This document shows, in pieces, positions 1,740-3,826 of a stretch of DNA of 64,000 bases. Under the pieces are notes generated by a model. That model did not search any database, had not been told where the DNA came from, and was given only the letters and a program-made list of their open reading frames with translations. The translations under genes were made by a program, and so were the position numbers. The stretch lies in the sequence record NC_061418.1. One strand, 5' to 3'. The first letter of the stretch is position 1; each line of letters begins with the position of its first letter.

Positions 1740-1798
1740 AAATTCCTCAATTAAAAAGTGTCTTCTACATTAAAACGGTTTACCGTAAAAAAGCATAG

Positions 1799-1826
1799 GA
1801 GAGAGGAGGGAATTCCCTCCTCTCTC
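1799..1826 (-). terminator. Rho-independent terminator
   Basis: 12-bp stem GAGAGAGGAGGG-AATT-CCCTCCTCTCTC with a T-tract shortly downstream on the minus strand. Confidence 0.8.
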
Positions 1827-1992
1827 GATTAATTCATTTATCAAAAAGTGATCTCTTTGAAAAAGAAACTTTTGTGGTAAGAAGGGCGGAGGTAAGGATA
1901 TAACCATCCCCAACACCGCCCATAGCCATTCAGCTATAAACAGAATTTAGCGCGACCTATCTAAGAATAAGATTGGAAGTTTTATTTTATAA

Positions 1993-2087
1993 TCTAGTGC
2001 TCTACCGGCTGAGCTATCTGCCTCCAAGAAACACTCTGTGAATGTGTCCAGGTAGGCAGAGCGGAATTCGAATCCGCGACCTCTAGA
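1993..2087 (-). ncRNA. Circularly permuted tRNA-like module B (YrlA-like)
   Basis: Minus-strand order: TCTAG, AGGTC, T arm GCGGA-TTCGAAT-TCCGC, acceptor 3' strand TCTGCCT-A-CC, hairpin linker, acceptor 5' strand AGGCAGA, TA, D arm GCTC-AGCCGGTA-GAGC, A, CTAGA. All four stems pair. Confidence 0.85.
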
Positions 2088-2190
2088 ATTCTTTCCGTAA
2101 AAGAAAGAAAGTTCAGTCCGCTATTTTACTGTTTACTCTTTATCTTTAAGCGTGTGAGGCGATAAGATAAAGTTAACACTAACCATCTGG

Positions 2191-2305
2191 GTCGCATTAT
2201 GGGTGCATTGATGACTGCGTCTACCAATTCCGCCATTCTCCCATAGTTTGGTGGGAGAAGAAAGAGTCGAACTTCCAGTGGGGTCATCACACCTGCAACA
2301 CGGAC
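2191..2305 (-). ncRNA. Circularly permuted tRNA-like module A (YrlA-like, Leu-type D loop)
   Basis: Minus-strand order: TGATGAC, CCCACT, T arm GGAAG-TTCGACT-CTTTC, TTCTCCC-A-CCA, AACTAT linker, GGGAGAA, TG-GCGGAATTGGTAGACGC, A, GTCATCA. Outer bulged helix GTC(C)GTGT/ATGCGAC. Confidence 0.85.
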
Positions 2306-2378
2306 TAACAATAAAGATAAGGTTGGCCTCAATCTTTATTATCAATGGGCACTCGTGAGAATACCCATTACTAACACA

Positions 2379-3146
2379 TTAAGCAGTGAAGTTTTTCAGA
2401 ATCACGTTGGTCAGTACTTCGCCGATAGAACCCTGAACAACTTCGGTGCAGTTTGCACGCATACGTGCATTAGTGACTTCAACGATCAGTTCGTCGATAT
2501 CACGCAGTGCGTTGGCTTTCTGCATCGGGGTGCAGGCGCCGGAATAACTTTTACGGGTGAAGCTACCAATTACGACGGTGCTTTCCGATTCTTTCACCTG
2601 TGCAGGGTGGTGGTCGGTAGCCGGCGCCAGGATAACCGGAGTGAGTACTTTCTCGGTTTTCGTCGTGACTTCGTCCGTCACGGTACGGAATCCGTAGGTG
2701 CTGTTGCTATCGCGTTCCCATTGTTTGGACGAATCCAGAGTAGGGGCAGCGGCGATCAGTTTGCGCAGTTCCGCCAGGCGTTTTTCCAGGCCCAGGAGTT
2801 CATCTACCGGCACTCCAGAAACGAGGACTTCGCCTTTGAACATGATGTCTGCTTTTGCGACCTGGTTAGTCAGGGCTTTTTGCAGGCGAAGGTCTTCTGC
2901 CGTGGCGAAATATTCGAAGAGGTACTGCAGCGTTTCGGCAACAGTGGTGATCACTGCCTTGCTGGTACTTTCGCTTTTTTCGATCGCGGCGTTGGCGTCG
3001 TTGTCTTCGTGCAGTTTCAGGGTTTTATCAAACCCGCTGAAATATTCAGCCGATTTATTGAATTTTTTACTGGCGTCTTCGATCAGGACTTGCACTTGTT
3101 TGGTGCGAGTGGGTTCTGCTGCCAATACTTCGTGTAACTTAGCCAT
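2379..3146 (-). CDS. Conserved hypothetical coiled-coil-rich protein (family recalled as DUF7873, unverified)
   Basis: 255 aa, strong codon bias, RBS AAGGA. The segments AKADIMFKG..VPV..LL.LEK.L and K.EK...P..L.PAT..HPAQV match a widespread phage/bacterial family I recognise from memory. Confidence 0.6.
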   Translation of the reverse strand: MAKLHEVLAAEPTRTKQVQVLIEDASKKFNKSAEYFSGFDKTLKLHEDNDANAAIEKSESTSKAVITTVAETLQYLFEYFATAEDLRLQKALTNQVAKADIMFKGEVLVSGVPVDELLGLEKRLAELRKLIAAAPTLDSSKQWERDSNSTYGFRTVTDEVTTKTEKVLTPVILAPATDHHPAQVKESESTVVIGSFTRKSYSGACTPMQKANALRDIDELIVEVTNARMRANCTEVVQGSIGEVLTNVILKNFTA

Positions 3147-3247: not shown

Positions 3248-3826
3248 TTAATCTACCATAGCCAACCGTAAAACCACCCCGCTGTAATGACCGCCTAAAT
3301 CCATACGACTGGCCAAAATCCACTGGAAGCCAAACGCTCTCGCAATGTAGCGAAACCCTGCGACATTAACGGCCGGTTCGTACCGATCACCGTCAACATC
3401 ATCCGGCAGATTACGTTGGTGAACTTGTGCCATTAAAGAATCGAAATCTGGGAGTAGCTTATAAGCGTACTCGACTAAAATATCTTTCATCCAGACGACG
3501 TACACCTCGCAGTCAAAACTTTCCATTACCGGAGTAATAGATAACCGCGTAATATTGCGCGCTTTATCTTCCAGCGTATATGCTTTGATTTGACGCACTC
3601 CGGCGGCATAAAGTTCGTCGAGTGTTTCGTTGAGTTCGTAATTAAAAGGGAGATCAAACCCAAGGATATTTTTAGCGTCATTCTCTACGTCCAGGTCAAC
3701 GATGCTCGTTCCAGGGGGCGAGATATGGGTAACCGTGATAAGAATGTGTTTGGCAGTGGAAGCAGAAACTTTTCCGGCCAAGTTAAACGCAGCAACAAAT
3801 TTTCCTAACGAGATTAATTCTGACAT
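3248..3826 (-). CDS. Hypothetical protein
   Basis: 192-aa ORF with RBS AGGAG, bounded by terminator hairpins. Confidence 0.7.
   Translation of the reverse strand: MSELISLGKFVAAFNLAGKVSASTAKHILITVTHISPPGTSIVDLDVENDAKNILGFDLPFNYELNETLDELYAAGVRQIKAYTLEDKARNITRLSITPVMESFDCEVYVVWMKDILVEYAYKLLPDFDSLMAQVHQRNLPDDVDGDRYEPAVNVAGFRYIARAFGFQWILASRMDLGGHYSGVVLRLAMVD

What the first reader, a model, noticed from the sequence alone, without database searches (positions are those of the whole stretch)
2191..2305. Permuted tRNA module A carries Leu-type identity elements, an encoded CCA and a Ro60-like bulged helix
Seen: acceptor GGGAGAA/TTCTCCC followed by A-CCA in a short loop; D region GGCGGAATTGGTAGACGC typical of tRNA-Leu; A15 with U48; anticodon stem extended to 7 bp (GTCATCA/TGATGAC). 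It leads into GTC(C)GTGT/ATGCGAC, which resembles the bulged-C GUCCG helix of Y RNAs. Established: bacterial LeuRS relies on A73 and D/T-loop architecture including 15:48 and does not read the anticodon. Inference: RNase P cleavage plus 3' trimming could give a two-piece RNA that is leucylated yet cannot decode, useful as a decoy or amino-acid donor.
Basis: partly seen in the sequence, partly recalled or inferred. Interest (0 to 1): 0.85.

Follow-up and report, generated by a model that had tools for sequence, protein, structure and literature searches.

The report
Phage permuted tRNA-Leu mimic RNA
A giant Klebsiella phage encodes a small RNA built like a leucine tRNA with its two halves swapped and no anticodon; the same design recurs in unrelated phages, resembles bacterial YrlA "Y RNAs", and here lacks their usual protein partner Ro60.

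Summary
On the minus strand, 2305-2185 is a circularly permuted tRNA. Its order is closing stem, V region, T arm, acceptor 3' strand, A73-CCA, 6-nt loop, acceptor 5' strand, an E. coli-type tRNA-Leu D arm, closing stem. It has no anticodon loop. A second permuted module lies at 2093-1966. Both sit in a roughly 0.5-kb non-coding stretch of nucleus-forming Klebsiella jumbo phage KpLz-2_45. This is the most conserved stretch of its neighbourhood.

The architecture is that of YrlA, the bacterial Y RNA-like tRNA mimic. Mycobacterium smegmatis YrlA is already known to be cut by RNase P and to carry CCA as a two-piece RNA.

The Ro60 link is not supported. The whole phage has no TROVE protein, the YrlA GNCGAA motif is absent, and the bulged-C helix is not kept in close relatives.

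My scans found about a dozen further permuted modules in phage tRNA regions. They have covarying stems and a perfectly covarying 15:48 pair. Three more independent lineages carry the Leu D arm with A73-CCA. A comparable sample of bacterial tRNA regions had none.

RNase P processing is likely. Leucylation is plausible but untested. I rate it a new variant of a known kind.

The parts
2314..2345 (-). Predicted promoter just upstream of module A. Coordinates are mapped from the FBKp24 GenBank annotation and are approximate.
   Evidence: Regulatory feature in MW394391.1 at locus 3609-3640. It ends about 9 nt before G2305. It is a computational prediction only.
2185..2305 (-). Module A: the whole permuted tRNA-Leu-like domain, including its outer helices.
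2283..2289 (-). Closing (anticodon-stem-like) helix, 3'-type strand UGAUGAC. It pairs with 2215-2209.
   Evidence: 7 bp. One A-to-G change in FBKp24 keeps the pair as G-U.
2260..2282 (-). V region CCCACU (U48 at 2277) and T arm GGAAG-UUCGACU-CUUUC.
2249..2259 (-). Acceptor 3' strand UUCUCCC, discriminator A73 (2252) and encoded CCA (2251-2249).
   Evidence: Invariant in all relatives. Pairs 7 of 7 with 2242-2236.
2243..2248 (-). Loop AACUAU, which serves as both 3' trailer and 5' leader. The predicted RNase P cut lies between U2243 and G2242.
   Evidence: Inference from the M. smegmatis YrlA precedent. N-1 is U.
2216..2242 (-). Acceptor 5' strand GGGAGAA, U8 and G9, the E. coli-type tRNA-Leu D arm GCGGAAUUGGUAGACGC, and A26.
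   Evidence: matches tRNA-Leu genes in every E. coli genome. (differs from the phage's own tRNA-Leu(UAA)).
2185..2215 (-). Closing-helix 5'-type strand GUCAUCA and the 3' strands of the outer helices P3 (2205-2202), P2 (2196-2192) and P1 (2189-2185).
   Evidence: RNAalifold. One U-G to A-U double change occurs in P2. The window has a C-A mismatch in P1.
2138..2172 (-). Conserved hairpin between the two modules.
1966..2093 (-). Module B: second permuted tRNA-like domain.
- Closing stem 2087-2083 with 1997-1993.
- T arm 2077-2061.
- Acceptor 2060-2054 with 2023-2017, closed by a 30-nt hairpin.
- D arm 2014-1999.
   Evidence: Rfam YrlA RF02553 at 37.6 bits, E = 2e-6, below the gathering score of 69. 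Fold z = -3.54. Scanner results.
1790..1826 (-). Intrinsic terminator: a 12-bp GC-rich hairpin followed by a U run. It ends the roughly 515-nt non-coding unit.
   Evidence: Compensatory changes in FBKp24.

Best explanation
Module A is the first of two circularly permuted tRNA-like domains in a non-coding transcript of roughly 0.5 kb, running from about 2305 to about 1790 on the minus strand. The phage is the nucleus-forming Klebsiella jumbo phage KpLz-2_45.

The RNA folds into a tRNA L-shape, with the T arm stacked on the acceptor and a D/T elbow with an A15:U48 Levitt pair. The anticodon arm is replaced by a long closing helix, and the acceptor stem is capped by a short loop that follows an encoded A73-CCA.

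It is a tRNA-derived mimic of the YrlA architectural class, but it works without a phage Ro60.

Most likely course (inferred): host RNase P cuts between U2243 and G2242. Host 3' exonucleases then trim AACUAU back to CCA at 2249. The result is a two-piece, anticodon-less tRNA-Leu look-alike held together by the acceptor and closing helices. It presents a host-type tRNA-Leu elbow and a free A73-CCA end to host tRNA-binding proteins. LeuRS, by charging or by sequestration, is the most specific candidate.

Shown here: the architecture, its conservation, its recurrence in other phages, and the absence of Ro60.
Inferred: processing, probability about 0.55.
Speculative: leucylation, about 0.3, and what a charged mimic would be used for.
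For: Architecture:
- The permuted cloverleaf is recovered by RNAfold and RNAalifold.
- ARAGORN calls a tRNA only after the halves are swapped in silico.

Selection:
- The region 2001-2500 is 95-98% identical between KpLz-2_45 and FBKp24, while the flanks are 50-75%.
- The downstream protein is only 67% identical.

A recurring class:
- The strict scanner finds 12 distinct modules that ARAGORN does not call as tRNAs. They lie in the window, L174, L007, L028, L030, L031, L049 and L056. Controls gave 0 hits.
- A closing stem that the scanner did not require is at least 5 bp in 8 of 12 modules, against 0 of 132 mismatched partner pairs.
- The 15:48 pair covaries in 12 of 12 modules, as G15:C48 in 5 and A15:U48 in 7.

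Leu-type subtype:
- L030, L049 and L174 carry the same D arm and A73-CCA, with different acceptor stems that pair 7 of 7.
- Among 287 pattern matches, six had 7 of 7 complementarity. Five of these lie where neither half belongs to a called tRNA (the window phage's relatives plus L030, L049 and L174). The sixth is an ordinary tandem tRNA-Leu pair.

Phage enrichment: 11 candidates in 0.46 Mb of viral loci, against 0 in 0.87 Mb of bacterial tRNA regions.

Leu identity:
- The D arm matches host-type tRNA-Leu.
- The identity rules are in PMC9976931.

Processing precedent: M. smegmatis YrlA, with a 7-bp acceptor stem, is cut by RNase P and bears CCA in vivo (PMC4201824).

All phage tRNA genes here encode CCA.
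Against: - No expression, end-mapping or charging data exist.
- The fold energy of module A is not exceptional (z = -1.47).
- The Leu-type relatives were found with a pattern that required the D arm and CCA. Only acceptor complementarity, U48, A73 (left free in the viral scan) and the non-tRNA context are independent observations.
- L030 and L049 lack the simple closing stem. L030 has its own anticodon-arm-like hairpin. The subtype is therefore not uniform.
- High local identity between the phages could partly reflect a recombination tract.
- Whether RNAs made inside the phage nucleus reach RNase P and LeuRS was not examined.
Confidence: 0.55

Rival explanations
1. It is a true Y RNA, a YrlA orthologue. 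It would bind a Ro60/Rsr protein supplied by the host and tether it to PNPase for RNA degradation, as in Salmonella, Deinococcus and Thermus phage phiLo.
For: - Same permuted T-acceptor-D architecture.
- Module B gives the best Rfam hit to YrlA, at 37.6 bits, E = 2e-6.
- A genuine phage YrlA next to a Ro-like gene also scores below the gathering score, at 52.1 bits.
- GUCCG at the 5' end resembles the metazoan GGUCCGA.
- Phage Ro60 plus Y RNA-like systems exist (PMC4201824; PMC12135203).
Against: - No TROVE or vWA domain in any of the 78 ORFs of 330-900 aa across the whole phage.
- tblastn with a phage Ro protein gives a best E of 2.2.
- A TROVE HMM hits nothing near any of the 12 modules.
- The GNCGAAN0-1G motif is absent.
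- The bulged-C register is lost in LPKP23, FBKp24 and Centimanus.
- E. coli lacks rsr-yrlBA (PMC4987338). Whether Klebsiella has rsr was not tested.
Confidence: 0.12
2. It is non-functional debris of tandemly duplicated tRNA genes: the 3' half of one copy followed by the 5' half of the next, in a phage tRNA region.
For: - The locus lies about 3 kb upstream of the phage tRNA cluster on the same strand.
- In a distant relative, the same DUF7873 gene is followed by ordinary tRNAs.
- Degenerate copies of V and T-arm sequence lie 3' of module B.
- Tandem tRNAs can give weak YrlA hits, for example 24.8 bits in phage 2050HW.
Against: - It is the most conserved stretch of the neighbourhood.
- All tertiary-contact nucleotides are intact.
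- The acceptor pairs 7 of 7, and there is an added 7-bp closing helix.
- The same design recurs in independent lineages with covarying stems and a covarying 15:48 pair.
- None was seen in 0.87 Mb of bacterial tRNA regions holding 612 tRNAs.
Confidence: 0.1
3. It is a permuted tRNA gene in the strict sense, as in the red alga Cyanidioschyzon. The transcript ends would be joined by an RNA ligase to create an anticodon loop, and the acceptor loop removed, giving a normal decoding tRNA.
For: - The 3' half precedes the 5' half, with an encoded CCA.
- The phage encodes a Tpt1/KptA RNA 2'-phosphotransferase (Pfam E = 3e-43), an enzyme of ligase-based RNA repair and splicing.
- The L030 relative keeps an anticodon-arm-like hairpin.
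Against: - There is no anticodon-loop sequence. The closing stem is 7 bp and continues into three more helices.
- The bulges lie on one strand only, so there is no bulge-helix-bulge motif.
- No RNA ligase or splicing endonuclease was recognised beside KptA or among the large ORFs.
Confidence: 0.05
4. It is a two-piece, permuted tmRNA-like rescue RNA.
For: - The permuted order of acceptor and T arm is the same as in two-piece tmRNA genes.
- Module B gives a weak hit to permuted beta-proteobacterial tmRNA, at 24.8 bits.
Against: - ARAGORN finds no tmRNA.
- The acceptor has G3:C70, not the G3:U70 alanine identity pair.
- A complete D arm is present, which tmRNA lacks.
- No tag reading frame or pseudoknots were identified.
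Confidence: 0.02

Closest known systems
YrlA (Rfam RF02553), the tRNA-like Y RNA of bacteria and of Ro60-encoding phages (Chen et al. 2014, PMC4201824)
   Same: - Circularly permuted tRNA-like domain: closing stem, V region, T arm, capped acceptor stem, D arm.
- tRNA tertiary nucleotides are kept, and the 15:48 Levitt pair covaries.
- It can sit inside phage tRNA arrays and be mis-annotated as a tRNA, as in Gordonia phage Boopy.
- The M. smegmatis member has a 7-bp acceptor stem, is cut by RNase P, and carries CCA as two pieces.
   Different: - No Ro60 gene within 4 kb, or anywhere in the phage.
- No GNCGAAN0-1G motif.
- Rfam scores are below the gathering score.
- CCA is fully encoded, not added.
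- The D arm is a host-type tRNA-Leu arm with the full Leu identity set.
- Two modules lie in one transcript of a nucleus-forming jumbo phage.
Metazoan Y RNAs with Ro60
   Same: A 5'-terminal GUCCG. In this one phage it can form a bulged-C helix.
   Different: - The bulged register is not conserved, even among phages about 99% identical.
- Metazoan Y RNAs have no tRNA-like domain.
- No Ro60 partner was identified.
Permuted tRNA genes of Cyanidioschyzon merolae, and two-piece (permuted) tmRNA genes
   Same: Gene order is 3' half, acceptor link, 5' half. The acceptor link is expected to be removed by tRNA end-processing enzymes.
   Different: - No anticodon loop or bulge-helix-bulge junction from which to regenerate a decoding tRNA.
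- No alanine identity, tag frame or pseudoknots.
Minimal tRNA-Leu substrates of E. coli LeuRS (summarised in PMC9976931)
   Same: A73, A15:U48, G18G19 and A20a are present. [quoted passage not shown]
   Different: Those are engineered one-piece RNAs. This is a natural, permuted RNA that would need cleavage to expose its CCA end.

Membership tests
YrlA / bacterial Y RNA | Permuted tRNA-like domain (T arm, capped acceptor stem, D arm) enclosed by a closing stem | tested here: met
YrlA / bacterial Y RNA | tRNA tertiary nucleotides, with a covarying 15:48 Levitt pair | tested here: met
   A15:U48 in module A and G15:C48 in module B. Consistent in 12 of 12 modules across the phage lineages.
YrlA / bacterial Y RNA | GNCGAAN0-1G motif near the 5' end (the proposed Ro60 contact) | tested here: not met
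   Read directly from 2380-1780 on the minus strand. The only CGAA lies in the T loop of module B. Module A has GUCCGUG instead.
YrlA / bacterial Y RNA | Encoded within about 4 kb of a Ro60 (TROVE) gene, on the same strand | tested here: not met
   - Pfam scan of all 78 ORFs of 330-900 aa in the 297-kb genome finds no TROVE or vWA domain.
- tblastn with a phage Ro protein, best E = 2.2.
- A TROVE HMM hits only the positive control.
YrlA / bacterial Y RNA | Reaches the Rfam RF02553 gathering score (69 bits) | tested here: not met
   Module B scores 37.6 bits. Module A gives no hit at E up to 10. A Ro-linked phage YrlA also scores only 52.1 bits, so this criterion is weak for phages.
YrlA / bacterial Y RNA | Physically bound by Ro60/Rsr | not testable with these tools
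   Needs immunoprecipitation.
Canonical tRNA gene | Contiguous cloverleaf with an anticodon loop | tested here: not met
   ARAGORN genes and Rfam tRNA gives no hit in the window. A cloverleaf is called only after the halves are swapped in silico and a filler loop is added.
Ochre suppressor tRNA (published tRNA-Sup-TTA of phiKp24; tRNA-Stop in LPKP23 and Centimanus) | Complete acceptor stem and D arm around the UUA loop | tested here: not met
   - The call borrows the T arm of module B.
- Its acceptor stem pairs only 5 of 7 in relatives and 4 of 7 in the window, where ARAGORN drops the call.
- The permuted reading pairs 7 of 7 and has a canonical D arm.
E. coli-type LeuRS substrate | A73, A15:U48, G18G19 and A20a in the tRNA-Leu D-loop context | tested here: met
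   Sequence. D arm equals the host-type tRNA-Leu D arm. Rules from PMC9976931.
E. coli-type LeuRS substrate | Free single-stranded CCA-3'OH end, and actual charging | not testable with these tools
   Requires RNase P cleavage and 3' trimming. The only support is the precedent in M. smegmatis YrlA.
Permuted tRNA gene (Cyanidioschyzon type) | Termini that form a processing junction and regenerate an anticodon loop after ligation | tested here: not met
   The closing helix continues through three further helices, with bulges on one strand only. There is no anticodon-loop sequence.
Two-piece tmRNA | G3:U70 alanine identity, tag reading frame, pseudoknots, no D stem | tested here: not met
   G3:C70 and a full D arm. 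ARAGORN finds no tmRNA.

The most novel reading that the evidence does not exclude
Large phages carry a previously unrecognised family of Ro60-independent, circularly permuted tRNA mimics. One subtype has an encoded N73-CCA. It is cut by host RNase P into two-piece RNAs and is aminoacylated, module A by LeuRS. The result would be charged RNAs that cannot decode. They would act off the ribosome, for example as decoys for host enzymes or immune toxins that act on tRNA acceptor ends, as LeuRS sponges, or as amino-acid donors.
Probability: 0.2. Interest if true: 0.85.

Novelty: new variant of a known kind. Interest (0 to 1): 0.6.

Why it matters
YrlA-type tRNA mimics have been sought, and defined, only next to Ro60 genes. 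This locus and the roughly dozen related modules found here show that the same permuted design is common in phage tRNA regions with no Ro60 gene detected in the flanking DNA available for each module (the whole genome for the window phage). This implies another partner or function.

The Leu-type subtype combines the complete LeuRS identity set, a 7-bp acceptor stem and an encoded CCA. That makes a natural, non-decoding, possibly aminoacylated RNA directly testable.

There is also a practical point. The "suppressor tRNA" reported for phage phiKp24, and copied into related annotations, is most likely a mis-call of one of these modules. Permuted modules are invisible to standard tRNA finders.

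Tried and rejected
- **Standard finders.** Rfam at gathering thresholds and ARAGORN on the window found nothing.
- **Neighbouring genes.** PHROGs gave no family for the eight neighbouring ORFs. Pfam gave only DUF7873 and weak AAA hits. DUF7873 is scattered over unrelated phages and says nothing about the RNA.
- **Promoter motif.** I tested whether the repeat AACYTTATCTT, found upstream of both modules, is a general phage promoter. It occurs only there and at one other site in the genome. A sigma-70 scan was uninformative.
- **Distant synteny.** Serratia phage 2050HW has only ordinary tandem tRNAs near the homologue of the 295-aa protein.
- **Covariance model.** MAFFT split the acceptor strands, so I could not build a model. 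I wrote an explicit scanner with controls instead.
- **Literature.** The supplementary tables of Chen et al. 2014 and the 2020 Ro60 review were not held, so the Ro60 status of Klebsiella stayed unresolved. Searches found no prior description of Ro60-less permuted tRNA-like RNAs in phages.
- **Readings rejected.** tmRNA, suppressor tRNA and Cyanidioschyzon-type permuted tRNA. Reasons are in the membership tests.

Full report
**Where the window comes from**

The window is bases 186001-250000 of Klebsiella phage KpLz-2_45 (NC_061418.1, 296.7 kb). The region 1700-2420 is 100% identical to that record. It is 99% identical to nine sister isolates and 89% identical to vB_KpM_FBKp24 (phiKp24) and Centimanus. 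These are nucleus-forming jumbo phages. A chimallin family domain and a phiKZ-type capsid were found by Pfam. The phiKp24 preprint reports shell and PhuZ proteins (10.1101/2021.03.02.433402). Nearly all genes, and the finding itself, are on the minus strand.

**The observation**

Read on the minus strand, module A has the following parts.

- Outer helices from 2305.
- Closing stem UGAUGAC, 2289-2283.
- V region CCCACU.
- T arm GGAAG-UUCGACU-CUUUC, 2276-2260.
- Acceptor 3' strand UUCUCCC, 2259-2253.
- A73 at 2252 and CCA at 2251-2249.
- Loop AACUAU.
- Acceptor 5' strand GGGAGAA, 2242-2236.
- U8 and G9.
- D arm GCGGAAUUGGUAGACGC.
- A26.
- GUCAUCA, 2215-2209.
- The return strands of the outer helices, down to 2185.

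RNAfold and RNAalifold both give this permuted cloverleaf. ARAGORN and Rfam's tRNA model see nothing in the native order. When the 5' and 3' halves are swapped in silico around a filler loop, ARAGORN calls a canonical 78-nt cloverleaf.

The D-arm segment matches annotated tRNA-Leu genes in all 5426 complete E. coli genomes. It differs from the phage's own tRNA-Leu(UAA).

**Surroundings**

The module lies in a 640-nt gap between a DUF7873 gene (2379-3146) and a 295-aa ORF (852-1739).

A second permuted module lies at 2093-1966. Its acceptor strands are UCUGCCU and AGGCAGA, closed by a 30-nt hairpin. It has a generic D arm with G15:C48. It is the best Rfam match to YrlA, at 37.6 bits and E = 2e-6, below the gathering score of 69.

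A promoter is predicted in the FBKp24 record about 9 nt upstream of G2305. A strong intrinsic terminator lies at 1826-1790. Together they delimit a non-coding unit of about 515 nt with several further conserved hairpins.

The phage tRNA cluster, in which every gene encodes CCA, lies 3 kb downstream on the same strand.

The "tRNA-Sup-TTA" or "tRNA-Stop" annotated in FBKp24, LPKP23 and Centimanus overlaps module B. It borrows module B's T arm and has a 5-of-7 acceptor stem. In the window one further mismatch makes ARAGORN drop the call. The permuted reading, with a 7-of-7 acceptor stem and a canonical D arm, fits much better.

**Evidence of selection**

Between KpLz-2_45 and FBKp24, nucleotide identity is 95-98% across 2001-2500. 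It is 50-75% to the left and 50-90% to the right. The downstream protein is only 67% identical.

Within module A the few substitutions are in loops or preserve pairing. One is A-U to G-U in the closing stem. One is a U-G to A-U double change in helix P2.

**What is known**

The architecture is that of YrlA, the tRNA-like Y RNA of bacteria and some phages (Chen et al. 2014, PMC4201824). YrlA is a T arm, a capped acceptor-like stem and a D arm enclosed by a stem. It has tRNA tertiary contacts and a covarying 15:48 pair.

That paper also shows that the M. smegmatis member has a 7-bp acceptor stem. It is cut by RNase P in vitro and in vivo and carries CCA, so it exists as two pieces. The authors already raised possible aminoacylation.

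**Tests of YrlA membership**

YrlA was defined by two further features: proximity to a Ro60 (TROVE) gene and a GNCGAAN0-1G motif. Neither holds here.

- I fetched the rest of the phage genome and scanned all 78 ORFs of 330-900 aa with Pfam. There is no TROVE or vWA domain.
- tblastn with the Ro-like protein of Gordonia phage Boopy gave a best E of 2.2.
- An HMM built from 60 TROVE proteins hit only the positive control, out of 4677 translated pieces from all loci.
- The GNCGAA motif is absent.
- The bulged-C helix GUC(C)GUGU/AUGCGAC is only one register in this isolate. In LPKP23, FBKp24 and Centimanus the 3' strand reads GCUAC, which breaks it. The register common to all relatives is GUCCG:CGGAU, without a bulge.

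E. coli lacks rsr-yrlBA (PMC4987338). I could not determine whether Klebsiella has it.

The positive control is instructive. In Boopy, a Ro-like gene is followed by a tRNA array that holds a YrlA. That YrlA scores 52 bits, also below the gathering score, and is mis-annotated as tRNA-Leu.

**A wider family**

I ran a pattern scan for T loop, then N73-CCA, then 10-22 nt, then the Leu D arm.

- It gave 47 viral, 120 metagenomic and 120 bacterial-genome matches.
- Almost all are ordinary tandem tRNA-X/tRNA-Leu pairs, according to ARAGORN.
- Six matches had 7 of 7 complementarity between the two acceptor strands.
- Five of these lie where neither half belongs to a called tRNA: two relatives of the window phage, plus L030, L049 and L174.
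- The sixth is a tandem tRNA-Leu pair.
- The three new lineages have different T stems and different acceptor stems: GAGGGAG/CTCCCTC, CTTCAGG/CCTGGAG and CGGGTGT/GCACCCG. All have A73-CCA and U48.

I then ran a stricter, type-agnostic scanner. It required a 5-of-5 T stem with a TTCRA loop, a 7-of-7 acceptor with the 3' strand first, U8, and a D arm with GG.

- It gave 34 hits (16 non-redundant) in 1.67 Mb, and none in block-shuffled or reversed controls.
- Twelve distinct modules lie outside called tRNAs: window A and B, two in L174, L007, two in L028, two in L030, L031, L049 and L056.
- The L007 module lies downstream of a 37%-identical DUF7873 homologue.
- L030 and L174 carry several modules in a row, like the window. 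In L030 each is preceded by a repeated promoter-like motif.

Two features that the scanner did not require support a real fold.

- A closing stem of at least 5 bp is present in 8 of 12 modules, against 0 of 132 mismatched partner pairs.
- The 15:48 pair is G:C in five modules and A:U in seven, with no exceptions.

The modules are enriched in phages. There were 11 candidates in 0.46 Mb of viral loci holding 529 tRNAs, and none in 0.87 Mb of bacterial tRNA regions holding 612 tRNAs.

Two subtypes appear. One has acceptor stems capped by tetraloops, like classical YrlA. The other has N73-CCA followed by a loop of about 6-13 nt: window A, L030, L049, both L174 modules, and L007.

**How it most likely works**

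Shown: a conserved, tRNA-shaped, anticodon-less RNA domain of tRNA origin, in a Ro60-less phage.

Inferred: the coaxial 12-bp stack of acceptor and T stems, the elbow, the RCCA and U at position -1 make module A a good RNase P substrate. Cleavage at 2243/2242 and exonucleolytic trimming to A2249 would give a two-piece tRNA mimic. The M. smegmatis precedent supports this. So does E. coli tRNA end maturation at encoded CCA (PMC2190699 abstract).

The product would carry every element reported as necessary for E. coli LeuRS: A73, A15:U48, G18G19 and A20a. It would lack only the parts shown to be dispensable (PMC9976931). Leucylation or LeuRS binding is therefore a reasonable and specific hypothesis, but nothing here tests it.

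What a charged or uncharged mimic would do is open. It might be a decoy for acceptor-end-directed host factors, a LeuRS sponge or an amino-acid donor.

**Rivals**

- A host-Ro60-dependent Y RNA remains possible but lacks its defining features.
- Decayed tandem tRNA duplicates are contradicted by conservation, recurrence and covariation.
- A ligation-matured permuted tRNA is unlikely, because there is no anticodon-loop sequence or junction motif. The phage does encode Tpt1/KptA.
- A two-piece tmRNA is excluded by G3:C70, a full D arm and the lack of a tag frame.

**Limits**

- The Leu-type relatives were found with a pattern that fixed the D arm and CCA.
- L030 and L049 deviate in the closing region.
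- Only 5-10 kb around the other modules could be checked for Ro60.
- The TROVE HMM was built from actinobacterial and phage sequences.
- No expression data were available.

**Verdict**

This is a new variant of the YrlA-type tRNA mimic: Ro60-less, Leu-type and with an encoded CCA. It is part of a phage-enriched family that standard tRNA finders miss or mis-call.

Noticed in passing
window 1966-2093 (minus); L001 3345-3429; L003 3352-3435: The "suppressor tRNA" (tRNA-Sup-TTA or tRNA-Stop) published for phiKp24 and annotated in LPKP23 and Centimanus overlaps permuted module B. It looks like a mis-call. It uses module B's T arm with a 5-of-7 acceptor stem, and ARAGORN drops it in the window, where one more base mismatches.
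   Followed up: yes
L015 4980-5079 (Gordonia phage Boopy, MK894436.1): A YrlA-like RNA (Rfam 52 bits) lies inside the tRNA array, 1.15 kb downstream of a Ro-like RNA-binding protein gene. In GenBank it is annotated as a tRNA-Leu overlapping tRNA-Gln.
   Followed up: partly
L030 8230-9100 (minus), viral contig IMGVR_UViG_3300045988_135955: An array of small tRNA-like RNAs: three permuted modules, one tRNA-Ile, and one element of T arm plus acceptor minihelix. Each is preceded by a repeated motif, roughly CATAA-N4-GTTCCTWT, that looks like a phage promoter. The Leu-type module here keeps an anticodon-arm-like hairpin CCGAU-CUCGAAA-AUUGG.
   Followed up: partly
L009 28320-28883 (NC_061418.1, minus): The phage encodes a Tpt1/KptA RNA 2'-phosphotransferase (Pfam E = 3e-43). 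This enzyme belongs to ligase-based RNA repair and splicing. No RNA ligase was recognised among its neighbours.
   Followed up: partly
window 2379-3146 (minus); L007 4001-4768: The DUF7873 protein upstream of the RNA locus has homologues in very diverse phages of Ralstonia, Rhizobium, Vibrio, Gordonia and cyanobacteria. In L007 it is again followed by tRNAs and a CCA-bearing permuted module (at +5513).
   Followed up: partly
L174 positions 534-600 of the reverse strand: A second CCA-bearing permuted module with C73. Its loop AACTCTAT resembles the AACTAT loop of window module A, which may point to a shared processing signal.
   Followed up: no
L066, L179, L072 (metagenome contigs): Related Leu-D-arm modules. 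Their T arm and D arm are intact, but the acceptor strands pair only 4-5 of 7, and neither half is part of a called tRNA. They may be degenerate members or use a different register.
   Followed up: no
window 1884-1921 and 1790-1826 (minus): A hairpin and the terminator downstream of module B differ between KpLz-2_45 and FBKp24 at several positions yet remain hairpins. The terminator shows one G-U to U-A double change. FBKp24 annotates a 38-aa ORF over part of this stretch, which is probably spurious.
   Followed up: no
members of alignment A3 (ORFs in L012, window, L013): Pfam found a Tad3 (Thoeris inhibitor) domain, a chimallin domain and a NAMPT/NadR NAD-salvage set among the large ORFs of this phage. 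I did not map them to coordinates.
   Followed up: no
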